A DNA stretch of 64,000 bases, from IMG/VR virus record IMGVR_UViG_3300025121_000011, positions 1 through 64,000 of that record; one strand, given 5' to 3'. Made by a program: the position numbers and the translations under genes. The notes beneath the pieces were generated by a model, which was not told the DNA's origin, did no database searches, and worked only from the letters and a program-made list of their open reading frames with translations. Of the stretch, positions 3,760 through 30,192 are shown in pieces; the stretch's first letter is position 1; each line of letters opens with the position of its first letter.

Positions 3760-4779
3760 TTATTTGAATGAAAACAAACCTACGTCAACAATTTTTAAAT
3801 GATTATCTTTTGTGGACATCATAATGTTTTCAGCGTGAACATCTTTCCAATGAATATTATAACTGCCTGATATAAATCGTAATGTGTCAAGTAGACCTTG
3901 TATATTTTCAGCAACATCATTATTAGGTCTTTTATTAAATATTTCTTCTGAATACGGAAATGCTATTTTAAAAAGTTCTTCTGATAGAAGATCATATATA
4001 ATATCTTTGATATTATAATAATTCGGATTACTGGTGTGTTTTTCAATTATATTAACAACTTGTGTTAAACTCAAAGTGTTTGTTTTTGGAAAATCTTTTA
4101 ATATTTGTTCTATTGTTGAAATATCAACATCCTCTTTAATTCTCTTTTGAATTTCTATTTCTATTTGGGTAATAAAAAGTGGTGTAAGTATTTTACGCCA
4201 AATATCTTTTCTGTATACTTTTGCCGCAGAAAATTCGCTAGCAACTTCGGCTGGAAGTGGTTTTAATTGTTCCATAACAATTAAATCATATAATTCATTT
4301 TCTGGCATAATTGTTCCACGTTTAATTAAATATATTTTTGGAAAATAGTCTGCATATTGTTTTGGCATTTGTTCTATGCGTTTTTGCAGAGCACCCCATA
4401 TTGGAAAGTCATTTGCTAAATAGCTGATAGTGATTTTTGCTGCAACTTGTTGACCCTTATAAATCGCGGAAAATACGCTACCAAATGCACCGGAGCCAAG
4501 ATGCTCCTTTGCATTTTGAGGCACCATTTGCAATCCATTTTCTTTTAGTATTTTTGCAGCCAAACTAATGATAACGGTTTGGTACTTATCTGATTTTTGT
4601 GCCGAAGGAATTATCTTTTCTAAATATTCTTCATCAGATATGGATTTTTCACCAAACTCTTCAGCATCTTCTTTATATCTATCTTCGAAAGATTGGTGTA
4701 ATTCAGAAACTGCTTGAGATTCAACAGTCAGATGTAAATCATTAAGTATTGTCTGCAAAATTTTAAGATAATCTTTCAT
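3760..4779 (-). CDS. Protein kinase-like (Hanks-type fold) protein
   Basis: LGSGAFGSVF Gly-loop, VAAKI Lys, WKDVHAENIM catalytic loop, KIVDVG. Confidence 0.85.
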   Translation of the reverse strand: MKDYLKILQTILNDLHLTVESQAVSELHQSFEDRYKEDAEEFGEKSISDEEYLEKIIPSAQKSDKYQTVIISLAAKILKENGLQMVPQNAKEHLGSGAFGSVFSAIYKGQQVAAKITISYLANDFPIWGALQKRIEQMPKQYADYFPKIYLIKRGTIMPENELYDLIVMEQLKPLPAEVASEFSAAKVYRKDIWRKILTPLFITQIEIEIQKRIKEDVDISTIEQILKDFPKTNTLSLTQVVNIIEKHTSNPNYYNIKDIIYDLLSEELFKIAFPYSEEIFNKRPNNDVAENIQGLLDTLRFISGSYNIHWKDVHAENIMMSTKDNHLKIVDVGLFSFK

Positions 4780-4814
4780 GCTGATTTCCTCGTTATTATA
4801 ATGTAATGCGTATA

Positions 4815-4821
4815 ATTAGTA
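4815..4821 (-). promoter_or_regulatory. TACTAAT candidate late-promoter motif
   Basis: 35 nt upstream of the kinase start; same motif upstream of 17531, 20902 and 27524. Confidence 0.5.
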
Positions 4822-4856
4822 TGACTTAATATGAAAATTAATTTACTTGGAGAACA

Positions 4857-5405
4857 ATGAATCCTTCTTTAAATATTCCATTATTTGAACTCGTTAAAGC
4901 AAAAGATCCTGTTTGTGATATTTTGGGTAATGAAATTATCCGAGGACAGGTGATAGCTTATAGTAAGGGTAGTCGTGGGCAAAGGAATCTGCTTGTCGGG
5001 GTAGTATCATGTCTTGTTCCTCATGGAAAAGGATATTCTATTCATTTAGTTTCCCAATCTGAATGGCACAATTGTAATCATCAGACTTATGCGGGAATAG
5101 ACAATTCTATTGTAATTCTGCATAATCCTCTTTATAGTTTAAATTCAAAAGTAATTGCTAATTTATTTGAAAATGTGGAGTCAATTAAAGGTAAGTCTCA
5201 TGGAGATGTTCAAGAGTTTAATGCAGAAAAAGGACCTGGTTACAGTTTTTATAGAAAAATTCATTGGAAAAATATCTTGCCAATGAATTATAAGTTTGGG
5301 GAAGCATTAGATTTGGAACAATATATTTCAATTCCAAATAAAAAAGAATTGGCTAAATTAGATAAAGCTTTTAAAGAAAAATATAAAAATATTACTGTAT
5401 ATTAG
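4857..5405 (+). CDS. Hypothetical protein
   Basis: 182-aa ORF with GGAG RBS. Confidence 0.7.
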   Translation: MNPSLNIPLFELVKAKDPVCDILGNEIIRGQVIAYSKGSRGQRNLLVGVVSCLVPHGKGYSIHLVSQSEWHNCNHQTYAGIDNSIVILHNPLYSLNSKVIANLFENVESIKGKSHGDVQEFNAEKGPGYSFYRKIHWKNILPMNYKFGEALDLEQYISIPNKKELAKLDKAFKEKYKNITVY

Positions 5406-5673
5406 GTTTAAAATTAATTATGATATACTATCAAGCCTTGGTAATGGATAGATAGAGATAAAACACAATGATGTATAATGGTGCTAGTCCGTGGGAAGAT
5501 ATATTAGGTGGTGAAGATATGGAATCAGTTAATATATCCATAGGATGCATTTTGAGACTTGGACTAAGTCTCAAAGAATAGTTGTAATTAATTTTTTGTT
5601 TTAACGATAGAATAAATTTTATCATATAAATAAAATAAAGATAGTAATAAGATTATATATTTACGGAGGTTTA

Positions 5674-6126
5674 ATGAGCCAAGAGAAATATGAAGCCAAA
5701 ATTCAAAAATATATACTTCTTATAGAGGCTAATCCAAATGATAAAACTCTAGATGATATAAGATTTGAAGTCACACTTCATCAGTTTTATCCCATTACGT
5801 GTCGAGATATAGAGATTGGGTGTGAATGTCCTGTTGGCTGGCGTAAAATTGTAGAATGTGCAATTTCCGCTATAGAAGAGATAGCAACAAATACCACTTC
5901 TTCTCCACCGCAAGTGGTTCAAATAAAACAAAAATACGGCACATTAAGAATATATATGATGTCAGAAGGCCATCCAGATGTTAGTAGAATTATAGATTTA
6001 GCTGAAAAGAAGTGTCATCGGACATGCACAAAATGTGGAGACTCTGGAATATTTAGAACTCAAATTCCTTGGGGTGGAGTATTGTGCGATCATCATTATG
6101 AGATATGGGTGACAGAGCATATTTAA
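5674..6126 (+). CDS. Hypothetical phage protein with C-terminal CxxC
   Basis: GGAGG RBS; GW...VVQIKQKYGTLRIY...CTKCG...LCDHH pattern. Confidence 0.75.
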   Translation: MSQEKYEAKIQKYILLIEANPNDKTLDDIRFEVTLHQFYPITCRDIEIGCECPVGWRKIVECAISAIEEIATNTTSSPPQVVQIKQKYGTLRIYMMSEGHPDVSRIIDLAEKKCHRTCTKCGDSGIFRTQIPWGGVLCDHHYEIWVTEHI

Positions 6127-6181
6127 TTACATTATTTCATGAATATTAGAATCCGCCTGATATGGCGAAGTTAGGTTTGGA

Positions 6182-6841
6182 GTGAAGTTATTTAACATTC
6201 CCATTAAATTTCATTGGTCATCTGTTTTTTTATTGCTGATGATTTTTTGTACTTCTAATTTTAGTATTATTTATGGATGTGTAATTGCGATAATGGTTTT
6301 GTTTTCCTTAATAGGGCATGAGCTGGCACACTGTTTGGTTGCTCGTGAATTTAATTATGATACCAAAGATATAACCATTATGGCTTTAGGCGGTGTAGCG
6401 CAAATAGCTCGCGCATCTAAAATGTCAGCTAAAGAAAATTTTTTAATGTCAATAGCGGGTCCAACATTTAACTTGTTTTGCGTAATAATACTTTTTATTC
6501 CTGCTATAATTTTAATTAATACGTTTTTAGGTTTAACAATATGTTACGCTATGGCGATCAACCTAATTATGTTTGGTTTCAATATGTTACCAGCTTATCC
6601 GTTAGATGGCAGTAGAGTATTTGGAGCTGTAATAGAATACTTTTTCGGAAAACAAAAAAGTATTTTGATGACAACCTGGATATCTTTAGCATCTGGAGTA
6701 TGTATTTGTTTTTTTGGAGGAATCAGTGGTTCTATATTTATTCTGATTATTGGCTTCATTGTTTGCTTTATTTCTTCTCCAGCACTTATAAGAAAGATAC
6801 AAAATACCTTTAGGTTTAAAAATGATAGATTCAATGTTTGA
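6182..6841 (+). CDS. Site-2 protease (M50) membrane metalloprotease
   Basis: HELAH, AGP..N, NMLPAYPLDG motifs; multiple TM segments. Confidence 0.92.
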   Translation: MKLFNIPIKFHWSSVFLLLMIFCTSNFSIIYGCVIAIMVLFSLIGHELAHCLVAREFNYDTKDITIMALGGVAQIARASKMSAKENFLMSIAGPTFNLFCVIILFIPAIILINTFLGLTICYAMAINLIMFGFNMLPAYPLDGSRVFGAVIEYFFGKQKSILMTTWISLASGVCICFFGGISGSIFILIIGFIVCFISSPALIRKIQNTFRFKNDRFNV

Positions 6842-7157
6842 AAGTATAGTAAAGAACTTAACAGATGAACCCGGTTTAACTTTAGTTGGAAGTCGCATCA
6901 CAAATAATGGTACGAAAGAATGTGTAACTTTTAAAATTAATGATTCTGATTTTTATATCTTCTTATTATGTAGTGAAGAATCAATTATTGGAAAATTATT
7001 TGAAAGACGCAAAACGGATGAGGTGTCTATTGTGGAAATTCAAGATCCTATAGATGTTTTGTTAGTTTGCAATATTATTACAGTCGAAAGATTGCTGGAT
7101 GTAATTTGTGATTTTAGAGTTAAACCAATTCTTTTTCATTTAAATTTATTTAATTAA
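6822..7157 (+). CDS. Hypothetical protein with C-terminal tag A
   Basis: ORF ends ..VERLLDVICDFRVKPILFHLNLFN. Confidence 0.65.
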   Translation: MIDSMFESIVKNLTDEPGLTLVGSRITNNGTKECVTFKINDSDFYIFLLCSEESIIGKLFERRKTDEVSIVEIQDPIDVLLVCNIITVERLLDVICDFRVKPILFHLNLFN

Positions 7158-7183
7158 AATATATAATCTACAGAGAGTTATCA

Positions 7184-7930
7184 ATGTCCATAGGTCTAAA
7201 AATAGATAATTTGCCAACTTTTAATATTGTTCCGGATTTTAATTTATTTGTGACGGGTGGATTCGTTCGAGATTCTCTTTTGCATATTGCATCAAAAGAT
7301 ATAGACATTGCTTGCGAAGCAAAAAGCTTTACAGAAATGTCCGATTGGGTAGAAAAAACTCATAGTAAAGTTTTCTTATCTAATCCTGAGTTCTTAACTA
7401 TTCGAGCCTTATATAAAAAAGGTGATGCACGAGATTATGTCTTGTGTCGAAAAGATGGAGCTTACAGTGATGGACGACATCCGGATGAAGTGAGTGCTGG
7501 TTCTATTCTGGATGATTTATCTCGACGGGACTTTACGATTGGAGCCATGGCAATAGACCTTAAAACTGGTCAGCTAATCGATCCTCACGGTGGGGCGTCT
7601 GATTTAAAACAACGCCTCATAAGAACCGTGGGGCGTGCTAGCGATAGGTTTGAAGAAGACCCGTTACGAATGTTGCGCGCTATTAGGTTTGCAATTACCA
7701 AGGGATTCTTTATTTCAGATGAAATTCTAAATATTTTATCAAATCCGGATTGGGCGGAGAAACTTTTGACAGTTTCTTCAGAAAGAATAAGAGAAGAAGT
7801 GTTTAAATGTTTTGTATTTGATACAGTTAGAAGTATGGAATTTTTATGTTCACATTGCTCTGCTGAGCTAAAAAATATAATTTTTGGCAATACAGGAATC
7901 TGGTTGAAGCCCACTATGGAGGCTCGATAA
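7184..7930 (+). CDS. cca: CCA-adding enzyme / poly(A) polymerase family nucleotidyltransferase (short form)
   Basis: GGFVRD, DIDI, DLSRRDFT, EDPLRMLRAIRF, ERIREE motifs. Confidence 0.9.
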   Translation: MSIGLKIDNLPTFNIVPDFNLFVTGGFVRDSLLHIASKDIDIACEAKSFTEMSDWVEKTHSKVFLSNPEFLTIRALYKKGDARDYVLCRKDGAYSDGRHPDEVSAGSILDDLSRRDFTIGAMAIDLKTGQLIDPHGGASDLKQRLIRTVGRASDRFEEDPLRMLRAIRFAITKGFFISDEILNILSNPDWAEKLLTVSSERIREEVFKCFVFDTVRSMEFLCSHCSAELKNIIFGNTGIWLKPTMEAR

Positions 7931-7933
7931 GAT

Positions 7934-8611
7934 TTGGACAAAAAAATACAATTAGAGATAGAATTGGAATCTTTGGCCACAATGTTTATGTGTGATGCTA
8001 TAATGATTGGTAACATAAAATGGACTATAGCAAAAAAACACTCTTTAGCCCTTGGAATGAGTAGCTTTTCTGAGGACATCAAATCTTTAAAAGAAGATTT
8101 TCTAATTAATAAAACGCCAAATATTCCACTTAAAAGTGATAACACAATAAACTGTAAATTGGCAGCAATGCTTATTGTAGCTTTGGCGGTCACAAATAGG
8201 CATTGGCATTCTTTTCTTGAAGAGATCGAAATCAAATACGGAAAGAATATATATTTACAAGTTATTTTAGAATTACTTGAGCTTAAAAAATATTATCAAT
8301 TAACAAAAAATGATAAAGGTTACTTAGTAAAATATTGGGCAGATCAAGAATATCTAGAAGAAGATTTTGTAAAAATGGTTTGCTTATCTTATTTTGATTC
8401 AGACTATTATTCGGCAAAGACGCTCTATATGCGAAAATTAGCAAAATCAAATAAGTTTGATCTACTTAGATTGTTTACAAAATCTTCAGCAAAAGGGATT
8501 CAACAAGTTCTTGTAGAATTGCTCCCCAAAGAAGATCTTATATATTTAATTAATTCGCCTCACGAAGAGATACAGAAAATATTGGAAAAAAAACTTAATA
8601 CGGAATCTTAA
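7934..8611 (+). CDS. Helical hypothetical protein with C-terminal motif B
   Basis: Ends VLVELLPKEDLIYLINSPHEEIQKILEKKL. Confidence 0.7.
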   Translation: MDKKIQLEIELESLATMFMCDAIMIGNIKWTIAKKHSLALGMSSFSEDIKSLKEDFLINKTPNIPLKSDNTINCKLAAMLIVALAVTNRHWHSFLEEIEIKYGKNIYLQVILELLELKKYYQLTKNDKGYLVKYWADQEYLEEDFVKMVCLSYFDSDYYSAKTLYMRKLAKSNKFDLLRLFTKSSAKGIQQVLVELLPKEDLIYLINSPHEEIQKILEKKLNTES

Positions 8612-8688
8612 ATAATTAAGATAAAAATAAAATTAACCAGGTAACAGAATAGTAGCCTATTCGATAAACCATCAAGCAAGGATTTAAT

Positions 8689-8934
8689 ATGGAACAGAAA
8701 CAAGTTGGCATTACTGATGAATATGGGTGCTTTGACATTAGCGATTTTGAACCCGGTGATAATATCATCGTAACTAATCCAAGAACCAGAGAGAGGATTA
8801 AGGGGATTGTTGTATCAACAAATAACCGGCCGGCATCTGTTGTGTTTGAGGATAAGAGTGGAGAAACCCATACGGTTAAGCTGAATAATGTGACCTTTCT
8901 TCAAGCTCCGGAGCGGGGGTGGTTATATCGATAA
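8689..8934 (+). CDS. Small beta-rich (SH3-like) hypothetical protein
   Basis: 81 aa; FEPGDNIIV...KGIVV pattern. Confidence 0.6.
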   Translation: MEQKQVGITDEYGCFDISDFEPGDNIIVTNPRTRERIKGIVVSTNNRPASVVFEDKSGETHTVKLNNVTFLQAPERGWLYR

Positions 8935-8947
8935 TACAGGAGTATAA

Positions 8948-9229
8948 TTGATTATAATAGAACATGAAGGCGCAGAATATACGTTAATAACTCGAAGTGG
9001 AAAGCTGCTTTGGGTTGATTCTAGAAATCAAATAGCAGATGCAAAATTATCAAATACATTGATAACACAAGCATCTAATATAACTGATGACGCATTGCAA
9101 AAGAAGTTAAAATCTGTTTTACCTAAACTCATAAAACAAGTTCCGGTTGAGACAAATATACATCGAATGCGTAAAAAGAAAAACGGAATCTCAATTAAAA
9201 TTAATTTAAAAAAAATGGAGGAAGAATGA
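8948..9229 (+). CDS. Hypothetical protein
   Basis: ORF with GGAG RBS, coupled to the next gene. Confidence 0.6.
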   Translation: MIIIEHEGAEYTLITRSGKLLWVDSRNQIADAKLSNTLITQASNITDDALQKKLKSVLPKLIKQVPVETNIHRMRKKKNGISIKINLKKMEEE

Positions 9230-9435
9230 TTTCAAATGCAGAAACGGTACGACAAGAATATACAGGATTAAAGGTACGACTTACCAAGGGAAGTCGACGC
9301 AAACAGCGATTAAGTAATCATCTAAAAATTACTATGGAAGGCGAGCGCACCGATGTTTCTATGCGGTTAACGATTCGTCAGGCGAGGGCACTTCGCGACT
9401 TTCTAGATAAGAATCTTGGAGAATCCGCTGAGTAA
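9226..9435 (+). CDS. Small basic hypothetical protein
   Basis: GGAGG RBS, ATGA overlap. Confidence 0.65.
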   Translation: MISNAETVRQEYTGLKVRLTKGSRRKQRLSNHLKITMEGERTDVSMRLTIRQARALRDFLDKNLGESAE

Positions 9436-9638
9436 CGTCTGATACATCAAGCAGTTGACCCGGCTGCTTAAAATTAAGCAAATAAAATAAAAATCGAAAG
9501 ATTTGTTGAAGCATTAGAAATGATTATGATAAACTCAAAGAAAATGTGGCGTCATAATCCAGTCTAATCTCACTTTATTTAAAATTAGCTGGAGAAGAAA
9601 TAAAAAGCTACTTCAGCTGCATTTACATCGGAGATTCA

Positions 9639-10319: not shown

Positions 10320-10405
10320 TCTAGGGGGTTAAAATTTTGAAATGTTTCGGTATATTTATATTCTAACAGGTATATGCTTAGAGCTATTACCACTAACACA
10401 AGGAA

Positions 10406-11320: not shown

Positions 11321-11321
11321 A

Positions 11322-11876: not shown

Positions 11877-11878
11877 AT

Positions 11879-12860: not shown

Positions 12861-12884
12861 TATGTTGATGAGTTAAATGATATT

Positions 12885-13454: not shown

Positions 13455-13816
13455 GGGGGCGAAATAGATTTCGACAGGGTGGATTAAATTAATGGTGCAA
13501 GTCGTCTACGATAACAATAGACGTTAAAGTTGTTATAAAAAAATCAATTGCTGAATTAAAACTCGCAGCTTAATCTTTAAGATTAAGTCCAGGTTTCTAA
13601 CCACCTGGTTTCCAAGGTTAGATAAGCGGTTGGCCACGCTGACAGAAAACAAATGCCAAAATGGTTACCCTCATTGTATGAGGTGGAATTCCTTAGCTCA
13701 TTTAAGGAATGGTTGGAAAAAAGAGATACTTTGCTTATTTAGAGAAATAAGACAAGCTTGTAAATGACCAGATGTTGAAGCTGCTTTGGACGAGGGTGCG
13801 ATTCCCTCCGCCTCCA
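13455..13816 (+). ncRNA. ssrA: tmRNA
   Basis: GGGGGCG...GATTTCGAC 5' end pairs with CGCCTCC-A (G3.U70 Ala determinant); T-arm GAGGG-TGCGATT-CCCTC; pk1 CGTCTA/TAGACG plus ATAACAA/TTGTTAT; tag 13550-13573 AELKLAA*. Confidence 0.95.
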
Positions 13817-13855
13817 CTATTTAACGGTGTCTTGTAAAGGAGGGTTTTGAGAATA

Positions 13856-16282: not shown

Positions 16283-16633
16283 ATGTTTGGAGAGTATATG
16301 AAAAAAAATCCTGAAGCAGGAGAATTGGTTTGCCTTAGTTCTAATGATAAATTTGCTTATCCGCATGGAGTAGCTTTATACTTAGATGATGGTAAAGTGG
16401 TTTTACCATCTTATTTGAAGGGGTGGGTTGTAACCGATATTGATGGTTTAGAAAATTATAGCACATTTGGCCGACATAATATCAGGAAAACACATTTCAA
16501 TGAATATGGAGAGATATGTGGATATGATTATTTAGCATATGATGCAGGTATTCCAACCGAACTTTGTCTTAGAAGAACAAATGGAGAATGGATTATTTCA
16601 AATGAGTTTAAACTTCCGACGTGGGTTCAGTAG
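16283..16633 (+). CDS. Hypothetical protein
   Basis: ORF; alternative start at 16298 has a GGAG RBS. Confidence 0.6.
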   Translation: MFGEYMKKNPEAGELVCLSSNDKFAYPHGVALYLDDGKVVLPSYLKGWVVTDIDGLENYSTFGRHNIRKTHFNEYGEICGYDYLAYDAGIPTELCLRRTNGEWIISNEFKLPTWVQ

Positions 16634-17531
16634 TTTTAAACAGATCATCAAAGAAACTCATTCCTCTTTCATCTATAATAGAATTCATAACTTCTGAATA
16701 TTTTTTAGAAACATTTTGTTGAATGGTGTGAATAACTTTATCAAAGTCTGGTAAGATCTGGCCTTCTGTTGCCCACTGGATGCCCATAATTGCGATAGAT
16801 AAACCAATATCTATCCAAAATAAAGATCCGGCAGATACAAGTTCTATAAAAGCCAAAACAGCATCTTTTACTGCATCTATAGAATTTGCAATTAATCCGA
16901 TAAATTCTTTAATAAAACCACGAGAAGCTTTTGATAACTGATCAACAGAGATTGTTTTTTCAGGGTCCTCACGAGTTTGTTCTGTGATGGAATTTAGTAT
17001 TTTTGGATCTAATGCATCTTTCCAAGAAATTCCTAAAGTGTCAGAAACACCTAAAACATTAGATAATTCTTTGGAGCCGTAATATAGGTTTTTTAATGCA
17101 AAAGCAATACTGAAGAATACACCAATAAAAGGAATGGCGCGCAAAGTAGCCCCAGCCAAAGCTTGCTTTATTAAGATTGGATTATGTTCAATTTGAGATA
17201 GATGTTTCAATGTTGCGGTTTTAGTTTCACTTGATATCATTTGATCAACATATTTGCCAGCCTCTTTTAAGGCATTTGGATCCGCACTTCTAATTTTATT
17301 TCCAGCATCGGCTAATTGACCGATTCCTACAGAAAAGTATTGCATGGCTCTGGTGTTTAAAGTTGGCTCATAAGGTTTTGCAACTTCTGAAAATGTGTGT
17401 CGCCATTGTTCAAATTCTTTATTTAGATTTGCATCTAGTGCTAAAATAATTAATTGACGCGTTTCCAAAGAGGCGTCTATATAATTATAGTGGTCTAAAA
17501 TTTTAGAAAGTTGAAGAAGTTGTTTATTCAT
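16608..17531 (-). CDS. Putative virion/ejected protein with N-terminal leader motif and hydrophobic helices
   Basis: MNKQLLQLSKILDHYNYIDASLETRQLI leader; LRAIPFIGVFFSIAFAL and FWIDIGLSIAIMGI helices; GAGG RBS. Confidence 0.7.
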   Translation of the reverse strand: MNKQLLQLSKILDHYNYIDASLETRQLIILALDANLNKEFEQWRHTFSEVAKPYEPTLNTRAMQYFSVGIGQLADAGNKIRSADPNALKEAGKYVDQMISSETKTATLKHLSQIEHNPILIKQALAGATLRAIPFIGVFFSIAFALKNLYYGSKELSNVLGVSDTLGISWKDALDPKILNSITEQTREDPEKTISVDQLSKASRGFIKEFIGLIANSIDAVKDAVLAFIELVSAGSLFWIDIGLSIAIMGIQWATEGQILPDFDKVIHTIQQNVSKKYSEVMNSIIDERGMSFFDDLFKTTEPTSEV

Positions 17532-17556: not shown

Positions 17557-17563
17557 ATTAGTA
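17557..17563 (-). promoter_or_regulatory. TACTAAT candidate late-promoter motif
   Basis: 25 nt upstream of the 17531 start. Confidence 0.5.
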
Positions 17564-20852: not shown

Positions 20853-20901
20853 ATCAAAAGATAGATTGAATACATTTAATCTAGATCTGTATGGAGAATT
20901 T

Positions 20902-22269: not shown

Positions 22270-22301
22270 GCCGTTTGATGTAAATATGGTATCATATATT
22301 T

Positions 22302-22655
22302 ATGAAATGTGCCATTCTGATAAAATTGCCGATTATTAAACCAATTACGCACATTAATAATGTTTGTGAATTTTCTGAAGTTAATGGTTATTTGTATCAC
22401 AAAGATAGTATTTTTGCAGTTTGTCAGGTGAAAGAGATAAGTGGGGATTGGTGGCTTGTACATCGCCCCACAGAACATTTGTTTGCGCGATTTCGCAGTA
22501 AGCGTGATGTAGAAAAGTTTTTAGATTTTTTTCTTAAGGAGCTGGATGAAAAAGATATTTGTTTGCTGACACCAATGTATTCACAGGTGAAAGAGGCATT
22601 AGAATCTTCTTTTAATATTGCATATCCGCGTTATTGGTGTGAATCTCGGCGGTAA
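22302..22655 (+). CDS. Hypothetical protein
   Basis: 117-aa ORF. Confidence 0.6.
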   Translation: MKCAILIKLPIIKPITHINNVCEFSEVNGYLYHKDSIFAVCQVKEISGDWWLVHRPTEHLFARFRSKRDVEKFLDFFLKELDEKDICLLTPMYSQVKEALESSFNIAYPRYWCESRR

Positions 22656-22691
22656 AAACTTAACCCATGATAGTATGGAATCGAAATATAT

Positions 22692-23357: not shown

Positions 23358-23366
23358 GGAGTATAT

Positions 23367-24953
23367 ATGGGAAAAATTGTTATTACTGGTCAAGAAGCAA
23401 GACAAAAAACTTTAGCCGGAGTTAATATTTTAGCTGATGCCGTCAAAGTTACACTTGGACCTCGCGGCAAAAATGTGGCCATTGAAGTACAAAAATATCA
23501 GGTACCCTTAATTACCAAGGATGGGGTAACAGTAGCAAGACACATTACTTTAGATGATCACTGTGAGAATATGGGTGCACAGTTAGTTAAGTCTGTGGCG
23601 GCAGCAGCTAATAATACTGCTGGTGATGGGACAACGACAGCAACGGTATTGGCTCAAGCCATTTATAGTCACGGATTAAAGATGGTTGCAGCAGGTTATA
23701 ATCCCGTTTTAATTAAAAGAGGGATAGAGTTAGCAACTGAAACTGTAGTTACTCATTTGAAAGAAATGGCAATAGGTGTATCAGATGAAAATACATTAGC
23801 TTACGTTGCTTCAATTTCGGCTAATAACGATAAAGCTTTGGGGAAAATGATTGCAGAAGCAGTGGCTATGGTTGGTAATGATGGAATATTAACGGTTGAA
23901 GAGGAATCTGGAACAACAACTCATGTGGAATATACTGATGGATTAAAATTAGAACGAGGTTTGTTGCATCCTGATTTTATTACAAATCCAAATAAATTAA
24001 CATCTGAGTTACAAGATGCATATATTCTACTTCATGATGGTAAAATTGATAATATTCATATGATCGTTCCTCTTCTTAAGACAGTCAGTGAAAGCGGTCG
24101 AGCGATTTTGATTGTTGTTAAAGAGATTGATTCTCAGACTATTAATCAGATTGCTTACAATTGTGCGAAAGGTAGTTTAAAGGCTTGCGTCATTAGAGCA
24201 CCGGGTTTTGGAGATCATCGGCGGGCCTTTTTAGAAGATATTGCTGTGGTCACAGGTGGTATAGTTACAAGTGATGCAAGACCATTAGATACCATAAATA
24301 TATTAGATTTAGGAGAAGCCAGAAAGGTTTCTGTAGGATTAAATTTTACTTCCATTATCGATGGGAAGGCTCCGGCGGGAGCCGTTGATGAAATGATTGT
24401 TACAATTAATAATCAATTATCTAATGGTGATTTGTTTGATCATCAAATAGATATTTTAAAAGGTAGACTATCTCGACTTGGTGGTGGTGCAGCAATTTTT
24501 AAGGTAGGTGGGACTTCAGATGCTGAAGTCAGAGAAAAACGCGATAGAGTAGAGGATGCTATAAATGCAGTACGCTCCGCTATAGAAGAGGGAATTGTTC
24601 CAGGTGGTGGAGCAGCTTTACTAAAATGTTTAAAAGTTCTAAAGAAAATGGATACATCTGATTTATTACCAGAAGAAGCAGTAGGTGTAAAAATTGTTAT
24701 GGAATCCATTCAAGCACCATTTTCTCAAATTATGAAAAATGCTGGAGTCGAATTTTCGTCAATTTATATCGAAAGGATTTCTGAAAGTAAATCATCAGGA
24801 TTTGATGCATTAAAAATGGAATATGTTGAGGATATGATAGAGAGAGGAATCATAGATCCTGTCAAAGTTGTGAGGGCGGCACTCGAACACGCAGCATCTG
24901 CTAGTGGTACTCTTTTAACAACAGAAGTGGTTATTTTTGATTCGGAGCAATAG
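23367..24953 (+). CDS. groEL: Group I chaperonin GroEL
   Basis: AVKVTLGPRGKNV, ITKDGVTVA, AGDGTTTATVLAQ, APGFGD, GIVPGGG, GIIDPVKV; no GGM tail. Confidence 0.97.
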   Translation: MGKIVITGQEARQKTLAGVNILADAVKVTLGPRGKNVAIEVQKYQVPLITKDGVTVARHITLDDHCENMGAQLVKSVAAAANNTAGDGTTTATVLAQAIYSHGLKMVAAGYNPVLIKRGIELATETVVTHLKEMAIGVSDENTLAYVASISANNDKALGKMIAEAVAMVGNDGILTVEEESGTTTHVEYTDGLKLERGLLHPDFITNPNKLTSELQDAYILLHDGKIDNIHMIVPLLKTVSESGRAILIVVKEIDSQTINQIAYNCAKGSLKACVIRAPGFGDHRRAFLEDIAVVTGGIVTSDARPLDTINILDLGEARKVSVGLNFTSIIDGKAPAGAVDEMIVTINNQLSNGDLFDHQIDILKGRLSRLGGGAAIFKVGGTSDAEVREKRDRVEDAINAVRSAIEEGIVPGGGAALLKCLKVLKKMDTSDLLPEEAVGVKIVMESIQAPFSQIMKNAGVEFSSIYIERISESKSSGFDALKMEYVEDMIERGIIDPVKVVRAALEHAASASGTLLTTEVVIFDSEQ

Positions 24954-25003
24954 TTATTCATTTAAAAAAAAATCTTGATAGTAACTCTGGTGTAGAGGTA
25001 AGA

Positions 25004-26089
25004 ATGAATATTAAGATATTTCCAAATGAAGACGATGTTAAAAGGCGGGATCAAATTGAAAAAAATTTGATTATTATGGGCACAGGTTTAATATCTGGTA
25101 GTTGGGTTTATCGCTTTTTGGAGGAAGCCTTTTGTAATTTGGAATTGGAAAAAATCCGTCCATATTGGAATGATTTAAATAAAGATATTATAATTTCAAT
25201 AATTTGCAAAGGACATCTTGATGAATTTAGAAAGATGATGAATGGTAAATATGTAATTTTGCCTGATCAAACGTTTAAAGGTTCTGAATTGTATAATGAT
25301 ATTATTCGAGTAAGTATAGAACAGTTATTTAGAACCGATTATTATGGTGATCGCCCTGAAAAATACATAACTATGTGTGAAGAAATAGTTATTTTTCATC
25401 CAGAAATATTAGAAGAGAGTTTTTTAAAACTTCCGATGTTAGAGAGGGTTTTGGCTTTTAAAACCCTAATTGATAAAAATTTTGCTAAACTGCATTCTCC
25501 ATATTGGATTAATTTTTGTCAAAATATAATAGATAATATAGATTGGACTACTTTGGGTGGACTCTCTGGTGAGATGTTGCTTTTAGCGGCAGATGTTTTG
25601 GATGAAATTAAAAAAGATGTTGATTGGGAGATTATTTACGCATGCTTCGCTAAGCTTGTAGAGCATAATAGACGCACATGCGATAATTTCGGAAAGATGA
25701 TTAATATGTGTTTACAAAAAATTCCAGATATAATATTTGAATATGCAATGGAAGCAAACTTTAAAAAAGTTCATAAGGATATTAGAATGGAGGTATACTC
25801 TGCTATCATTGGAGCGGGATTATTTGATGTGCAACTCGCTAGAAGAATTAGAAGTGATAGCAGTATGTATGTTTCATCAATTTGTATTGAATCATTTTTT
25901 AAAGAAATTGAAAATTACGATAATAAAGAAAAATTATTAGAGCAATTTTTAGATACCAGATATGATCCTGTTATAAAAATTTTAATAGAAAAGGCGCCAG
26001 TTAAATATCTTCCATTTTTTGTTGGAATTACAGATGTAAGCTGTAAAAAGTTATTAGAAAAGCGAATGCAATCTGATATTATTAAATAA
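25004..26089 (+). CDS. Helical hypothetical protein with C-terminal motif B
   Basis: Ends VIKILIEKAPVKYLPFFVGITDVSCKKLLEKRM. Confidence 0.7.
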   Translation: MNIKIFPNEDDVKRRDQIEKNLIIMGTGLISGSWVYRFLEEAFCNLELEKIRPYWNDLNKDIIISIICKGHLDEFRKMMNGKYVILPDQTFKGSELYNDIIRVSIEQLFRTDYYGDRPEKYITMCEEIVIFHPEILEESFLKLPMLERVLAFKTLIDKNFAKLHSPYWINFCQNIIDNIDWTTLGGLSGEMLLLAADVLDEIKKDVDWEIIYACFAKLVEHNRRTCDNFGKMINMCLQKIPDIIFEYAMEANFKKVHKDIRMEVYSAIIGAGLFDVQLARRIRSDSSMYVSSICIESFFKEIENYDNKEKLLEQFLDTRYDPVIKILIEKAPVKYLPFFVGITDVSCKKLLEKRMQSDIIK

Positions 26090-26113
26090 TTTCAATATGG
26101 AGCATGTAAAAAA

Positions 26114-26491
26114 ATGACTGATTTAGATGATTGTTATATTTTAAGTAGAAATTTTCACATTAATAAATTCAGAGCATTATTTAATGTAACTATTTCGGTC
26201 ACAAAAAGTGATGAAACTGGTGAAGATATAAGTTCAGAAGATGTAAAGTATCAGGAAGAGATAGAATCAGCGAGAATTACTCAACAGAATCTTGAAGAAA
26301 ATTTATTTATTACCCAAGATGGTACAATAATTGGAATTAATCGTACGATAGCAGATCAATGGCTAACGGATTCTGATGTCCATGCTGTAAGATGGGGAAA
26401 TAAGAAAATACCAGATAAGCTGCTGATTTCTAAACCAGAAGATCTTTATAAGATGCTTTCTGCATTTATTCCATTGGATGAAACTGTTTAA
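26114..26491 (+). CDS. Hypothetical protein
   Basis: GGAG RBS; 125 aa. Confidence 0.65.
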   Translation: MTDLDDCYILSRNFHINKFRALFNVTISVTKSDETGEDISSEDVKYQEEIESARITQQNLEENLFITQDGTIIGINRTIADQWLTDSDVHAVRWGNKKIPDKLLISKPEDLYKMLSAFIPLDETV

Positions 26492-26520
26492 TATATTTAT
26501 ATAAAATTTTGGATGGAAAC

Positions 26521-26550
26521 GGCCGCGATCATAAGTCGCGGCTATTTTTA
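26521..26550 (+). terminator. Intrinsic terminator
   Basis: GGCCGCGAT-cataa-GTCGCGGCT hairpin followed by ATTTTT. Confidence 0.8.
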
Positions 26551-26636
26551 TTTGTTTTTAAATAAAGTAATTTTGTAATGATCTGTTAATATTTTTTATT
26601 GTGATATGGCATTTCGATTGTAAACTATAACTAGAG

Positions 26637-27020
26637 GTGCGTGTGCAAAAGCAGGCTGGATTAGAAGATACAACAATGACAGATCCAAATACTGGTCTGA
26701 AAATTAGAGTATCTACTACAACTCGTAAGATGTATAGATACATTTTTAGAGGTCAAGAAGAAGAGGCGATGCGAAATAATCAATTAAATGAATTTATTGC
26801 TAATGATTTTGTTAAAAGTTCTGATAAGGTTGTACATCATTTTAGACTTGGAAAAGGTGGTGACTCAGAAAGGACTAAGGCAGAGATTAGAAATAAAGTT
26901 GGCTCAACAATGTTTTTTATTTCAGTAGAACGAGGCTCTTATATTGATATTTTAACAATTCAAAGCGCTTGGAAATCTCCTAAATATACCTCTACATATG
27001 GAATTAGGAAAAATAAATAA
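26637..27020 (+). CDS. Hypothetical protein
   Basis: 127-aa ORF 2 nt before the next gene. Confidence 0.65.
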   Translation: MRVQKQAGLEDTTMTDPNTGLKIRVSTTTRKMYRYIFRGQEEEAMRNNQLNEFIANDFVKSSDKVVHHFRLGKGGDSERTKAEIRNKVGSTMFFISVERGSYIDILTIQSAWKSPKYTSTYGIRKNK

Positions 27021-27022
27021 TC

Positions 27023-28417
27023 ATGAAAAAAATTTCTCAAATAGTTGCTGCTTGGCCTCAATTATATAGTAAATTAAAAACTCCTCCACAAGGCGTTAAT
27101 CTTGGAGGATTTTCATCTAAATTGCCGCCTCAAAGTCAGATTATTTTTGAAAATCAACCTAATACAGAAAATCCTCAAGCTATAGCTTATGTTTCATCTG
27201 GAGATAATCAGGATGGTGTAATTGATAAAATTCATGTTGTTGTACCTCGATTAGAGCAAGAGTTTAGACGCCTTGGTATTACTGGGGATACAAATGATCC
27301 GGAAAATCTAACCAAAATGCTTGCAGCCTTTGTAGAGATTTTATCTCATGAGATTGGTCATATACAAGATTTTGATCCAAATAATAAACAAAATCCATTT
27401 CCAGGTAATGAGCCTAGAGCAGAACAGGCGGCCCGAGAAGCACTTTCTCAATTTTCCGTACAAGGTACTACTAATATTCGAGATAGATTTAACAAACACA
27501 TTAATAATGGTGGGAGACAATTAATGATTAATATTTTATCTAAGCTTAATAAACTGGCATCAGATTTGGATGCTAAAAAGCAATATGAATTAGCAGACGA
27601 AGCAGATCGTATAGCAAGAGGTATGCTTAATGTTAAAGCTGAAGATGAAGATTGGGTGGGACGTGAAAAGATGCCCCCACAGAGTTCGGCGGAAGCATTA
27701 CCACCAGAAATGAATCCACCTCAAACTGGAGCATTAAGTCAATATGACAAGTCTAGGAATGCTCAAAAGGGATCAATTCAACCCCCTGGTGATAAAAATT
27801 ATACATATGATTATCTTCCAGAAGAAGATGCATTTATTGTTAGAACTGCTCCACCAGCTAATTACAAGGCCGTAGGGGCACGTTTAAGGAAGGGAACTAA
27901 AGCTTATAAGATATTGGAACAGTACATTCCAAAAACAGAAAATCAACCTGTAGCAAGTGGACCAATTAATGAAGACGGTAATACGGTAGCATTAAGAGGT
28001 GTTTTAAATCAGTTTAAGCGAGCATTAGAGAAAAATGCTTGGGGTGAAGACATTACTAATTTATTTAAGTCTACTGCTGCTATTACAAGTACATCTGCGG
28101 ATTTTTTAAATAAATTTTTAAATGCAAAAGGTATAGAGATTTTAATTAAATCACCACTTGAATTACAAGAACTTGGTAATGTATTGAAGTCTGAAATACG
28201 TAATCAGAATATACAATTTAAGCATAAAAATAAAGAATCTTTGGTACAGATGGTTTCAGCTATTGAAGGGCTTGCTAAGAAGTCTAAGGAAAATGAACAA
28301 ATCCAGCCAAATGCCAAGAATTTAAGTGATAAGTTAAAGAAAGCTGCATCATTAGATATTAAATCTAATATGGAAGTGGCATTTGGGACTTCATGTAGAA
28401 CTCCATTTGGAAGGTAA
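27023..28417 (+). CDS. HExxH metalloprotease-like N-domain fused to a leader-motif protein; probable nested in-frame start at 27524
   Basis: LSHEIGH...E motif; internal GGGAGA RBS plus ATG 27524 giving MINILSKLNKLASDLDAKKQYELADEADRI. Confidence 0.75.
   Translation: MKKISQIVAAWPQLYSKLKTPPQGVNLGGFSSKLPPQSQIIFENQPNTENPQAIAYVSSGDNQDGVIDKIHVVVPRLEQEFRRLGITGDTNDPENLTKMLAAFVEILSHEIGHIQDFDPNNKQNPFPGNEPRAEQAAREALSQFSVQGTTNIRDRFNKHINNGGRQLMINILSKLNKLASDLDAKKQYELADEADRIARGMLNVKAEDEDWVGREKMPPQSSAEALPPEMNPPQTGALSQYDKSRNAQKGSIQPPGDKNYTYDYLPEEDAFIVRTAPPANYKAVGARLRKGTKAYKILEQYIPKTENQPVASGPINEDGNTVALRGVLNQFKRALEKNAWGEDITNLFKSTAAITSTSADFLNKFLNAKGIEILIKSPLELQELGNVLKSEIRNQNIQFKHKNKESLVQMVSAIEGLAKKSKENEQIQPNAKNLSDKLKKAASLDIKSNMEVAFGTSCRTPFGR
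27469..27475 (+). promoter_or_regulatory. Intragenic TACTAAT candidate late promoter
   Basis: 48 nt upstream of internal ATG 27524. Confidence 0.45.
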
Positions 28418-28419
28418 AA

Positions 28420-30192
28420 ATGTTTGAAACGTCAAAGCTGCTTGCAAAGCTAGCTACAGAGTTGGATGAAAATGGGTATCTGGATTGGGCAGATCAAATC
28501 GATGATATAGAAAATATCACAACTGATGTAGATGTTGCCTCGGGGCAACACATGCCCGCTGGAGATGCACAATGGACACACCCAACTGTTTGTGCAAGTC
28601 TTAGTAAGAAGTCTATGGGACTTATGGATGTGCCAATTGGTGATTTGGATTATGCTAATAGACAGGGTATACCAGATGATGACATGGATAAGCAGTTATT
28701 TTCTGGAGAAGAAGACGGTGTATCTATGCCACCAATCAATAGAAAATATCATGAGGTAGATGATATGGAAATTCCACTTAAAAAGCTTGAAGAATATTTT
28801 AAATCTCATGGATTATATAAGCAGGCAAAAGACATTTCTGCAATCAGAATTGCTAATCTGGGTGGGCCAATAACTACAGGTGGGACTGCTGGAACTGTTG
28901 CCGGTGCTTCGGCTGGTACTGTCGGTGGATTAACAATTGGAACAGCTTTAGGAGTATTATTTCCACCTTTGTTACCAGTTTCAACTGTTTTAGGTTCTGT
29001 TATTGGAGCTTTTAGTGGTGGTATTGCCGGAAAATATACCGGAGAAGAGATTCAGGCAAAGATAAAAAAATATCTTGATGATAGGCCACCTCAAAAAGAA
29101 GAACTAATGAGAGTAACTAATCGACTTAGAGAGATTCGCAATACTTTAATTACTAAATATAAGTTAACAGAACCAGAAATTGAGTCAATCATTGCTGGCA
29201 GGGTAAATGTAAACTCTTTAATATCTAGTAAATTTCCGGGAAAAGATGAAAAGGAGCTTGTAGCGTTAATTTCAGAATATGATAAATTAGTTAAACGTTT
29301 CACACAAATAATTTCTGAAGGTCTTAAAGAAGAAACTAGTTCCGATTCTAAAGGCATCTCAGAAGGAGAACCCGTTAGTACTGGACGAATAGAAGAATCT
29401 AGTCCCGCTAAAACACGAGGAAATAATTCAGTTGCTAAATTGCAAAAACTTATTGGAGTGACTTCAGATGGTATTTGGGGGCCTGAGACATCCGAAGCGT
29501 GGAACAAATTTATAAATAATAATAAAGACGAGATTTTAAAAGAATTTCCTGAGGCCGATCTAGAAGCTACTAAGAATAATTGGCCCGCTGTTGCAAAATT
29601 TTATAAACTGACTCCAGATGCCATTGGTATTTTACAATTTGCTCAAGCAATTGTAAATACATCAGCAGAAGCACCAGCAGTAACACCAGAAGCAGTAACA
29701 CCAGAAGCAGTAACACCAGAAGCAGTAACACCAGAAGAAACACCGGCAATAACTTCAGATGAAGTTTTAAAGGCTCTCACAATGCTTTCTACTAGTGATG
29801 AGCCACATATGTCTGAGGGAAATGGTAAGACGGTAAAATCTCTTGACGGGGTTATTTCTAATAGACGTACTAATAGATATATTAGACACTTAGGTAAAGT
29901 TGCTGATGGAGATGGAAACGATATTCAAAATGTTGCAAATCTTATGGTTTCAAGATATGGAGATGCTATGCAGGCTGAGCTTCAAACAGCTAAAAAAACT
30001 CATGAAGCAACTGATATGCCGGATTATAATGCAAAACATAGGGCAGATCATTTGAATTATATTGTTTATAAGTATCTTCAGAGGGCTTGGGGAGCATTAA
30101 GTAAGAATCCCGAATCAAGCAGACGAGATGAGAGAGCGGCTAGACGAGAAAGAAAACAAGAAAATAGGGGACAGCGAAGATTAGCCCGATAA
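28420..30192 (+). CDS. Putative virion protein: leader motif, glycine-zipper TM region, peptidoglycan-binding-like motif
   Basis: LLAKLATELDENGYLDWADQID; GxxxG-rich hydrophobic region; VAKLQKLIGVTSDGIWGPETSEA resembles PG_binding_1. Confidence 0.75.
   Translation: MFETSKLLAKLATELDENGYLDWADQIDDIENITTDVDVASGQHMPAGDAQWTHPTVCASLSKKSMGLMDVPIGDLDYANRQGIPDDDMDKQLFSGEEDGVSMPPINRKYHEVDDMEIPLKKLEEYFKSHGLYKQAKDISAIRIANLGGPITTGGTAGTVAGASAGTVGGLTIGTALGVLFPPLLPVSTVLGSVIGAFSGGIAGKYTGEEIQAKIKKYLDDRPPQKEELMRVTNRLREIRNTLITKYKLTEPEIESIIAGRVNVNSLISSKFPGKDEKELVALISEYDKLVKRFTQIISEGLKEETSSDSKGISEGEPVSTGRIEESSPAKTRGNNSVAKLQKLIGVTSDGIWGPETSEAWNKFINNNKDEILKEFPEADLEATKNNWPAVAKFYKLTPDAIGILQFAQAIVNTSAEAPAVTPEAVTPEAVTPEAVTPEETPAITSDEVLKALTMLSTSDEPHMSEGNGKTVKSLDGVISNRRTNRYIRHLGKVADGDGNDIQNVANLMVSRYGDAMQAELQTAKKTHEATDMPDYNAKHRADHLNYIVYKYLQRAWGALSKNPESSRRDERAARRERKQENRGQRRLAR
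29677..29736 (+). repeat. 15-bp coding tandem repeat x4 (AVTPE)
   Basis: Four exact copies of GCAGTAACACCAGAA. Confidence 0.95.

What the first reader, a model, noticed from the sequence alone, without database searches (positions are those of the whole stretch)
3760..30192. Shared N-terminal leader helix on unrelated proteins, including a kinase: candidate capsid-loading signal
Seen: pattern L..L...L(D/N/E)..(G)....A..(I/V)..(I/L) in the kinase (YLKILQTILNDLHLTVESQAVSEL), 17531 (QLLQLSKILDHYNYIDASLETRQL), 27524 (KLNKLASDLDAKKQYELADEADRI), 28420 (LLAKLATELDENGYLDWADQIDDI) and again inside 28420 (PLKKLEEYFKSHGLYKQAKDISAI). Several are followed by small-residue sites ending in Ala (IILA, VKA, RIA). 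Three of these starts have TACTAAT upstream and the fourth follows one directly. Known: T4 internal proteins use a cleavable capsid-targeting sequence. Inference: late-made cargo (kinase, membrane-active and PG-binding proteins) is packaged through this leader, cleaved by the head protease and injected at infection.
Basis: partly seen in the sequence, partly recalled or inferred. Interest (0 to 1): 0.75.

Follow-up and report, generated by a model that had tools for sequence, protein, structure and literature searches.

The report
Shared helix-turn-helix tag in jumbo phages

Summary
The window is the first 64 kb of a complete 335-kb groundwater jumbo phage. It belongs to a large unannotated family with consensus LIKLANxLDxKGLxKEADxIDxII. 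AlphaFold2 predicts a helix-turn-helix (pLDDT 94). I found no match in Pfam, PDB sequences or GenBank phages. Related jumbo-phage contigs carry 4-22 copies each. A DNA pattern scan found no true copy in 596 Gb of prokaryote genomes.

Carriers here are unrelated proteins: kinase-like proteins, an M15 peptidase, a lysozyme, an HExxH protein and a membrane protein.

The five segments differ in strength. Those at 27524 and 28420 are strong (26.5 and 34.0 bits). The second 28420 copy is borderline. The kinase and the 17531 protein do not match the family profile, although the kinase's paralog does.

The tag is not a simple leader: only 56% of copies are N-terminal, many proteins carry two or three, and no shared cleavage site or head protease was found. 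TACTAAT is a real promoter-like element shared with head and tail-fibre genes. Capsid loading stays plausible but untested.

The parts
28432..28515 (+). Tag copy 1 at the N-terminus of the 590-aa protein 28420-30192 (residues 5-32, SKLLAKLATELDENGYLDWADQIDDIEN)
   Evidence: 34.0 bits against the external family profile A2. The genome search match at 28441-28509, E 2.9e-8.
28768..28863 (+). Tag copy 2 inside the same protein (residues 117-148), a borderline member
   Evidence: 6.5 bits with A2, inside the null range. 6.7 bits in the own-genome leave-one-out test. A Met and a GAGG lie just upstream.
28861..29037 (+). Gly-rich hydrophobic (Gly-zipper-like) segment of 28420-30192, a probable membrane-inserting region
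   Evidence: Weak Pfam Gly-zipper hit. PHROG hits to tail lysin and tape-measure families over this stretch.
27023..28417 (+). 464-aa ORF: an HEIGH motif (27347-27361) in the N-terminal part, then the tag, then about 260 aa of unknown function
   Evidence: Translation. Ortholog in G003 with HEQDH and the tag at the same place.
27536..27631 (+). Tag inside 27023-28417 (residues 172-203); it becomes N-terminal if translation starts at 27524
   Evidence: 26.5 bits with A2. The genome search match at 27536-27622, E 3.2e-6.
27466..27526 (+). Candidate internal promoter and ribosome-binding site: TACTACTAAT (27466-27475), GGGAGA (27512-27517), ATG (27524-27526)
   Evidence: The same three elements at the same spacing occur in the G003 ortholog, despite 28% protein identity.
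3760..4779 (-). Atypical protein kinase (339 aa) whose N-terminal helix is a degenerate, tag-like segment (4693-4776)
   Evidence: Pkinase 34.2 bits, above the 31.7 cut-off. N-terminus scores -4.6 bits with A2 and 1.1 bits in leave-one-out. Full-length paralog 247725-248849 carries a recognisable tag.
4815..4821 (-). TACTAAT 42 nt upstream of the kinase start
16608..17531 (-). 307-aa protein with hydrophobic segments; its N-terminal segment (17445-17528) only resembles the tag
   Evidence: -0.4 bits with A2 and 2.9 bits in leave-one-out. No Pfam or PHROG family.
17557..17563 (-). TACTAAT 32 nt upstream of the 17531 start

Best explanation
The motif is a modular tag of about 30 residues that folds as helix-turn-helix. 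Its family consensus is M-(I/L)-K-x-L-I-K-L-A-N-x-L-D-x-K-G-L-x-K-E-A-D-x-(I/L/V)-D-x-I-I-K-K. It is specific to one cosmopolitan lineage of uncultured jumbo phages.

Shown:
- It is fused, mostly at the N-terminus, to many otherwise unrelated proteins, most of which have no ortholog in related genomes.
- It is conserved at the protein level.
- It is joined to its carrier by variable, often acidic or Pro/Gly-rich linkers.
- In this genome it is enriched on genes behind a TACTAAT promoter-like element that also precedes the head-gene cluster.

Inferred:
- The exposed hydrophobic face and the invariant acidic residues (D12, E19, D24) dock onto one common phage-encoded partner, so all tagged proteins go to the same place.
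- The most likely place is the assembling procapsid. The tag would then work like the T4 capsid-targeting sequence or the coat-binding helix-turn-helix of a scaffolding protein. The tagged kinases, cell-wall hydrolases, HExxH protein and membrane protein would be packaged and delivered with the DNA.
- Removal of the tag by a protease is not required by the evidence and is unlikely to be general.
For: Real and non-random:
- scores far above shuffled proteomes.
- 144 proteins at E<=1e-3 among 1.84 billion.

Modular, on unrelated carriers:
- different catalytic domains in this genome.
- the 84 tagged representatives share no other family.

Fold: one search gives helix 2-13, turn, helix 17-32, pLDDT 94.

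Selection acts on the protein, not on the DNA: one search shows that 49-65% of identical residues use different codons.

Virus-restricted and multi-copy:
- 51 IMG/VR loci, all true, with 120 copies.
- 4-22 copies in each of five large contigs.
- 0 true copies among 22 pattern hits in prokaryote genomes.
- arrays of small genes that begin with the tag.

Conserved position across genomes: (27023-28417 ortholog, and the tag-first gene after it).

Pointers to the capsid:
- TACTAAT enrichment on carriers.
- The same element precedes the head cluster (genome 102251, then an 885-aa protein, a cement-like protein and a capsid-like protein) and a tail-fibre-like gene here. In relatives it precedes the cement-like gene and large conserved genes.
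- A tag copy lies at the extreme C-terminus of the 885-aa protein directly upstream of the cement-like and capsid-like genes (14.6 bits).
- Among tagged representatives there are single weak hits to 'internal head protein' and 'T7 capsid assembly protein'.
- The T4 capsid-targeting sequence is an established precedent for an N-terminal address on varied packaged proteins (PMC5694885).
Against: - No virion data exist for this uncultured lineage.
- 44% of copies are C-terminal or internal, and many proteins have 2-3 copies. That fits a general docking or cross-linking module better than a leader.
- No shared cleavage site.
- Head-gene profiles for portal and protease found nothing, so the head machinery is poorly defined.
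- The capsid-protein assignment rests on a precomputed Pfam label that the local Pfam copy did not reproduce, and its AlphaFold2 model failed (pLDDT 38).
- The C-terminal tag of the 885-aa head-cluster protein is absent from its G003 ortholog.
- TACTAAT also precedes a primase fragment and an HNH endonuclease, so 'late' timing is an inference.
- Some tagged proteins have transmembrane segments directly after the tag.
Confidence: 0.4

Rival explanations
1. The tag is a docking module for a partner that is not in the virion. It could recruit accessory enzymes to a cytoplasmic or membrane-associated phage complex. It could also mark them for a phage chaperone (two GroELs here, DnaJ in relatives) or for timed removal by the conserved trypsin-like peptidase.
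For: - Internal, C-terminal and multiple copies.
- Transmembrane segments directly after the tag in several carriers.
- DnaJ and trypsin-like genes lie close to tagged genes in three independent contigs.
- A Trypsin_2 peptidase lies next to the tagged lysozyme here and is conserved in relatives.
- 27023-28417 and 28420-30192 lie a few genes downstream of a GroEL gene, in conserved synteny.
Against: - No partner has been identified.
- Gene proximity is weak evidence.
- This reading does not explain why kinases and cell-wall hydrolases share a promoter element with head and tail-fibre genes.
Confidence: 0.3
2. The tag is a self-associating helical hairpin. Tags pair into four-helix bundles, so tagged proteins form oligomers. 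Proteins with two or three tags would cross-link into a matrix or condensate, wherever that forms.
For: - A lone two-helix hairpin with an exposed hydrophobic face is unlikely to be stable (inference).
- Many proteins carry a tag at both ends, or three tags separated by long linkers.
Against: - There is no positive evidence; the one complex prediction gave no verdict.
- The invariant acidic surface residues would repel each other in a homomeric bundle (inference).
Confidence: 0.15
3. There is no functional module. The five segments are chance look-alikes among amphipathic N-terminal helices in an AT-rich genome.
For: Two of the five segments (the kinase and the 17531 protein) score at or below the shuffled-proteome level with the external profile and in leave-one-out.
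Against: The other segments and seven further proteins score far above the null. The family has 144 significant members in 1.84 billion proteins and 4-22 copies per related genome.
Confidence: 0.03

Closest known systems
T4 capsid-targeting sequence (CTS) on internal proteins IPI-III, Alt and gp24
   Same: A short shared N-terminal sequence on otherwise unrelated proteins. It addresses them to the prohead so that they are injected with the DNA (PMC5694885). From my own knowledge, the T4 carriers sit in variable gene clusters where only the N-terminus is conserved; the tag-first gene arrays look similar.
   Different: The CTS is 10-20 residues, strictly N-terminal, and removed by the gp21 protease at a defined motif. 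The tag here is about 30 residues and folds as a helix-turn-helix. It also occurs at C-termini, internally and in several copies. No common cleavage site follows it, and no T4-type protease profile matches this genome.
Long N-terminal propeptides of phiKZ / SPN3US giant-phage head and ejection proteins
   Same: Giant phages package many proteins. Their N-terminal regions are thought to target them to the prohead, and paralogs can share near-identical N-termini (PMC5694885).
   Different: Those propeptides are 80-160 residues. They are cut at A/S-x-E by a known protease and are shared among paralogs, not among unrelated enzymes. No sequence relation to this tag was found.
Coat-binding helix-turn-helix at the C-terminus of the phage P22 scaffolding protein (my own knowledge; not tested here beyond fold type)
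   Same: A small helix-turn-helix is enough to dock a protein to the inside of a procapsid. Here one tag copy sits at the extreme C-terminus of the large protein encoded just upstream of the cement-like and capsid-like genes.
   Different: The P22 element is basic and this tag is acidic. There is no sequence similarity to any PDB chain, and the structural search gave only generic hairpins. The G003 ortholog of the 885-aa protein lacks the tag.
Encapsulation peptides of bacterial microcompartments and cargo-loading peptides of encapsulins (my own knowledge)
   Same: A short helical address peptide plus a flexible linker is fused to either end of unrelated enzymes and binds the inner face of a protein shell.
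   Different: Those are single amphipathic helices or short extended motifs in cellular systems. This tag is a two-helix hairpin found only on viral contigs.
TPR / PPR-type helical-hairpin repeats
   Same: A hairpin of about 34 residues with small residues at the helix-packing positions. The profile also picks up long repeat proteins weakly (8-16 bits per repeat), and the nearest PDB shapes include PPR repeats.
   Different: TPR and PPR units work as tandem arrays forming a superhelix. Here the unit is single or separated by long linkers, and no TPR or PPR Pfam family matched.

Membership tests
New 'LIKLANxLDxKGLxKEAD' tag family (profile A2, built without this genome) | Score above the shuffled-proteome maximum (9.9 bits) against the external profile | tested here: met
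   Met by 28420 copy 1 (34.0 bits) and the 27524 segment (26.5 bits). Elsewhere in the genome it is met by 254737 (48.5), 206614 (22.8), 254030 (16.6), the 102641 C-terminus (14.6), 113231 (13.0), 247725 (11.0) and 112297 (10.3).
New 'LIKLANxLDxKGLxKEAD' tag family | The same score criterion, applied to the kinase (3760-4779), the 17531 protein and 28420 copy 2 | tested here: not met
   -4.6, -0.4 and 6.5 bits. Leave-one-out with the genome's own profile gives 1.1, 2.9 and 6.7 bits. The kinase is linked to the family only through its tagged paralog.
New 'LIKLANxLDxKGLxKEAD' tag family | Helix-turn-helix fold | tested here: met
   AlphaFold2 on the 80-sequence alignment: helix 2-13, turn 14-16, helix 17-32, mean pLDDT 94.
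T4-type capsid-targeting sequence | Strictly N-terminal, 10-20 residues | tested here: not met
   The tag is about 30 residues. 80 of 144 copies are N-terminal, 22 C-terminal and 42 internal.
T4-type capsid-targeting sequence | Followed by a conserved prohead-protease cleavage motif | tested here: inconclusive
   No fixed site. [LI]-x-E is at background (13 against 12.4). A-x-E is modestly enriched (13/68 against 5.8±2.0).
T4-type capsid-targeting sequence | A cognate prohead protease is encoded in the genome | tested here: not met
   PF03420 (S77) and PF04586 (S78) give no match in the genome. The PF03420 search had no positive control, so a divergent protease is not excluded.
T4-type capsid-targeting sequence | Necessary and sufficient for incorporation into the prohead | not testable with these tools
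   Needs virion proteomics or a tag-reporter packaging assay.
Scaffolding-protein coat-binding helix-turn-helix (P22 type) | C-terminal helix-turn-helix on the scaffold encoded next to the capsid gene | tested here: inconclusive
   A tag lies at the C-terminus of the 885-aa protein upstream of the cement-like and capsid-like genes. That protein's role is unknown and its G003 ortholog lacks the tag.
Eukaryotic-like protein kinase (Pfam Pkinase), for 3760-4779 | Profile match above the curated cut-off, with catalytic residues present | tested here: met
   34.2 bits against a cut-off of 31.7. GxGxxG, a Lys, a catalytic-loop D...N and DVG are visible. The protein ends just after DVG, so it is an atypical, truncated kinase fold.
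Peptidoglycan-binding domain (PG_binding_1), for 28420-30192 | Profile or sequence match to the domain | tested here: not met
   No Pfam hit at E<=0.1. phmmer of residues 325-405 against PDB gives nothing below E 0.3. Only a by-eye resemblance remains.

The most novel reading that the evidence does not exclude
A cosmopolitan clade of jumbo phages uses one portable helix-turn-helix 'address label' that mimics a scaffold's coat-binding element. With it, the phage loads a changing set of up to about 20 effectors per genome into the capsid for co-injection. These include protein kinases, cell-wall hydrolases, an HExxH protein and membrane-active proteins. Some tag-first products are made from conserved promoters nested inside longer genes.
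Probability: 0.3. Interest if true: 0.85.

Novelty: new variant of a known kind. Interest (0 to 1): 0.68.

Why it matters
If the tag is an address label, it immediately marks the likely 'delivered' or co-localised proteins of a whole, globally distributed clade of uncultured giant phages. That is dozens of fast-evolving proteins per genome, most with no other annotation. These are prime candidates for host-takeover and anti-defence functions.

The tag would also be a compact, transferable handle for directing foreign proteins to its destination, as the T4 capsid-targeting sequence and the P22 scaffold helix-turn-helix have been used.

The family is absent from Pfam, from PDB sequences and from the literature I could search. 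Simply defining it improves annotation of thousands of metagenomic proteins.

Tried and rejected
- Close relatives of 28420-30192 and of the kinase in IMG/VR: none found.
- Megablast of 12 kb against GenBank phages: no match.
- tblastn of a two-tag protein against 50,697 GenBank phages: no match.
- Family profile in four 600-kb huge phages, which are the nearest GenBank relatives by PrkA and terminase: no match.
- Alignment A2 was too diverse for the search for related loci, and A3 gave one locus. A degenerate DNA pattern worked instead.
- Head-gene profiles PF07068, PF03420, PF05065, PF04586, PF04860 and PF25209 through the genome search: no match.
- PHROG scans of 20 large ORFs found no structural families.
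- Complex prediction of two copies of the tag: no verdict (score 0.02). This is not evidence either way.
- Foldseek of the tag model against PDB: nothing below E 1, only generic hairpins.
- Profile search of PDB sequences: no hit.
- AlphaFold2 of the capsid-like protein with a shallow alignment failed (pLDDT 38), so no fold search was made.
- Atlas search of the 885-aa head-cluster protein: no usable hit.
- Peptidoglycan-binding domain in 28420-30192: not confirmed.
- Rejected: the tags are recent DNA duplications or recombination cassettes. Synonymous sites are largely scrambled.
- Rejected: a Sec/Tat-type signal. The tag is highly charged and also sits on cytoplasmic-type kinases.
- RNA evidence for timing was not pursued. 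All runs that hold the sequence are groundwater or soil DNA metagenomes.

Full report
**What the window is.** The window is the first 64 kb of a single 335,169-bp contig. IMG/VR classes it as a complete virus record with direct terminal repeats. GC content is 34%, 92% of the sequence is coding, and about 350 of 383 ORFs lie on the + strand. The genome carries two GroEL genes, a tmRNA gene, intein-bearing IMPDH, primase and SbcC-like genes, and a PrkA-type kinase. It recurs in groundwater and soil metagenomes. The nearest GenBank phages are 600-kb 'huge phages', at about 30-36% protein identity. Two IMG/VR contigs, G003 (316 kb) and G001 (223 kb), are true relatives: 132 and 74 of the 383 proteins have syntenic BLAST matches.

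**The observation.** All five quoted segments exist. Three lie at residues 4-30 of their proteins: the kinase 3760-4779(-), the 307-aa protein 16608-17531(-) and the 590-aa protein 28420-30192(+). A fourth lies at residues 119-142 of the 590-aa protein. The fifth, '27524', is internal to the longest ORF (27023-28417, residues 174-197).

A profile built from just these five segments finds seven more copies in this genome's proteome at 8.4-14.1 bits. Thirty shuffled proteomes give a best score of 4.6±1.9 (max 9.8), and the reversed proteome gives 4.5.

The additional carriers, in genome coordinates, are:
- 111477-112274(-) and 112297-113184(-), kinase-like paralogs;
- 113231-113959(+), Pfam Peptidase_M15;
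- 206614-208011(-);
- 231300-232118(+), Pfam Phage_lysozyme with a weak LysM;
- 247725-248849(-), a full-length paralog of the window's kinase;
- 254737-255963(+), where the copy is internal.

Weaker copies lie at 254030-254728(+) and at the C-terminus of 102641-105298(+). The carriers share nothing else, so this is a module on unrelated proteins.

**A much larger family.** A 10-segment alignment from this genome (A1) was searched against 1.84 billion representative proteins. It returned 144 proteins at E<=1e-3. Apart from some long repeat proteins that match weakly, these share a sharply conserved unit: M-(I/L)-K-x-L-I-K-L-A-N-x-L-D-x-K-G-L-x-K-E-A-D-x-(I/L/V)-D-x-I-I-K-K. L4, L7, A8, L11, D12, G15, E19, A20 and D24 are present in about 86-97% of copies.

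Of 144 strong copies in 112 proteins, 80 are N-terminal (45 begin at residue 2), 22 are C-terminal and 42 are internal. Many proteins carry two or three copies, often one at each end.

AlphaFold2 folds the unit as helix 2-13, a three-residue turn, then helix 17-32, at pLDDT 94.

Searches for an existing description found nothing:
- no Pfam family covers it;
- the ESM Atlas neighbours are unannotated viral clusters under Pfam 38.1;
- no PDB sequence matches the profile;
- GenBank phages give no tblastn hit;
- four literature searches found no description.

**Distribution.** A degenerate DNA pattern for LDxKG(L/F)xKEA(D/N) found 51 loci in IMG/VR. All of them contain true copies, 120 in total, and about 70% sit within 12 residues of an in-frame Met. 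The same pattern found 22 places in 596 Gb of prokaryote genomes, and none is a true copy. Five large IMG/VR contigs carry 22, 11, 15, 8 and 4 copies. Many of these sit in arrays of small genes that each begin M(I/L)KELIKLA... and then diverge completely. Four 600-kb huge phages have none.

Within one genome the tags are about 55% identical in protein. Yet 49-65% of the identical residues use different codons. The conservation is therefore selection on the peptide, not recent duplication.

Of 84 tagged representatives, almost none has any Pfam or PHROG family.

Most tagged genes of this genome have no ortholog in G003 or G001, although a third of all genes do. The tagged set is the fast-turnover part of the genome.

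A profile built only from other genomes (A2) gives these scores:

| Segment | Bits against A2 |
|---|---|
| 28420 copy 1 | 34.0 |
| 27524 segment | 26.5 |
| 28420 copy 2 | 6.5 |
| 17531 protein | -0.4 |
| kinase | -4.6 |

The shuffled-proteome maximum for this profile is 4.0±1.8 (max 9.9). Leave-one-out with the genome's own profile agrees: 1.1 bits for the kinase and 2.9 for the 17531 protein.

The kinase is tied to the family only indirectly. Its paralog 247725-248849 aligns from residue 1 (E 2e-30) and scores 11.0 bits. The kinase-like pair 111477/112297 and their G001 ortholog share a diverged variant of the tag. The title feature, 'including a kinase', is thus the weakest part of the observation, though kinases as a class do carry the tag here.

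**The 27524 start.** TACTACTAAT (27466-27475), GGGAGA (27512-27517) and ATG (27524) precede the tag inside the 464-aa ORF. The G003 ortholog is 319 aa, 28% identical, has HEQDH where this genome has HEIGH, and has its tag at residues 185-215. It shows the same TACTACTAAT, GGGAGA and ATG at the same spacing. In both genomes the next gene begins with a tag. This supports a nested, tag-first product in addition to the full-length protein. That reading is an inference and has not been shown.

**TACTAAT.** In the window its count is at chance (17 against 17.2 expected). Genome-wide, however, 10 of 77 copies lie 20-45 nt upstream of a start codon, each followed by a Shine-Dalgarno-like GAGG, where about one is expected. 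In G003 and G001, 10 and 13 of 30 copies lie within 60 nt upstream of starts.

Five of 12 tag carriers have the element, against 5 of 371 other genes (p=3e-6). Without the two weak members the figure is 3 of 10 (p=0.0014).

The other genes behind TACTAAT include:
- the first gene of the head cluster: genome 102251, then an 885-aa protein, then a cement-like protein, then a 337-aa protein;
- a tail-fibre-like gene;
- in the relatives, the cement-like gene and several large conserved genes;
- but also a primase fragment and an HNH endonuclease.

The 337-aa protein carries a precomputed Phage_capsid_4 label and has more than 1,600 homologs at about 80% identity.

'Late, with the structural genes' is therefore a reasonable inference, not a demonstrated fact.

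**Interpretation.** Four things are shown:
- the unit is a portable helix-turn-helix under purifying selection;
- it is fused through variable linkers to many unrelated proteins;
- it is restricted to one jumbo-phage lineage;
- in this genome it is partly co-regulated with virion genes.

The simplest function for such a unit is docking to one common partner. I rank the procapsid as the most likely destination (confidence about 0.4). The reasons are the promoter link, the copy at the C-terminus of the large protein encoded next to the cement-like and capsid-like genes, and the nature of the cargo: cell-wall hydrolases, a Gly-zipper membrane protein with tape-measure-like hits, and kinases that make most sense if delivered at the next infection. 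There is also the close parallel with T4 internal-protein loci and their capsid-targeting sequence (PMC5694885).

- the many C-terminal, internal and multiple copies;
- the absence of a shared cleavage site;
- the lack of any recognisable prohead protease;
- the absence of the C-terminal copy from the G003 ortholog of the 885-aa protein.

Rival destinations remain open. These are a non-virion hub, a chaperone or the conserved trypsin-like peptidase, or self-association. The single complex prediction allowed gave no verdict and is not used as evidence.

**Verdict.** The capsid-loading interpretation is partly supported and untested. As a family the tag appears undescribed. As a kind of system (an address peptide on varied cargo) it has clear precedents, so I rate it a new variant of a known kind.

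Noticed in passing
window 13455-13819 (+): A full-length tmRNA gene in the phage genome. ARAGORN gives tag peptide VKVVIKKSIAELKLAA; Rfam RF00023 scores 97.3 bits.
   Followed up: partly
window 34106-35674, 47899-49575, 51911-55138 (+): Intein-splicing domains interrupt IMPDH, a DnaG-type primase and an SbcC-like ATPase; the last also has a LAGLIDADG domain. The terminase candidate (genome 223045-225699) is 884 aa against about 460 aa in two relatives, so it probably holds an intein as well.
   Followed up: no
window 23367-24953 (+) and genome 74373-76037 (+): Two GroEL-type chaperonin genes in one phage genome. Both are conserved in the relative G003.
   Followed up: no
window 27466-27526 (+); G003 113816-114775 (-): A conserved TACTACTAAT, GGGAGA and ATG inside an ORF in two genomes that are 28% identical in protein. 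This suggests a nested in-frame gene, with a full-length HExxH protein plus a shorter tag-first product.
   Followed up: partly
window 29677-29736 (+): An (AVTPE)n tandem repeat in the 590-aa protein. A near-identical database protein (580 aa) has two units fewer, so the repeat number varies between samples.
   Followed up: no
window 25-2837 (+): Five consecutive ORFs of similar size (170-199 aa) at the start of the genome. They may be a tandem paralog array.
   Followed up: no
genome 232577-233332 (-); loci L018 8898-9608, L079 7831-8556: A Trypsin_2-type peptidase with an N-terminal hydrophobic segment lies next to the tagged lysozyme and is conserved in G001 and G003. Trypsin-like genes also lie one to three genes upstream of tagged genes in unrelated metagenome contigs, downstream of a giant protein with PolyA_pol, LigT and LigD_N domains.
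   Followed up: partly
genome 105997-107010 (+): The capsid-like protein has more than 1,600 homologs at about 80% identity on contigs up to 422 kb, from groundwater, marine (Tara) and other metagenomes. The lineage is cosmopolitan and its capsid protein is unusually conserved.
   Followed up: no
genome-wide strand distribution: Six of 12 tag carriers lie on the minus strand, although only 32 of 383 ORFs do (Fisher p=1.4e-4). Tagged genes tend to be inserted against the main direction of transcription.
   Followed up: partly
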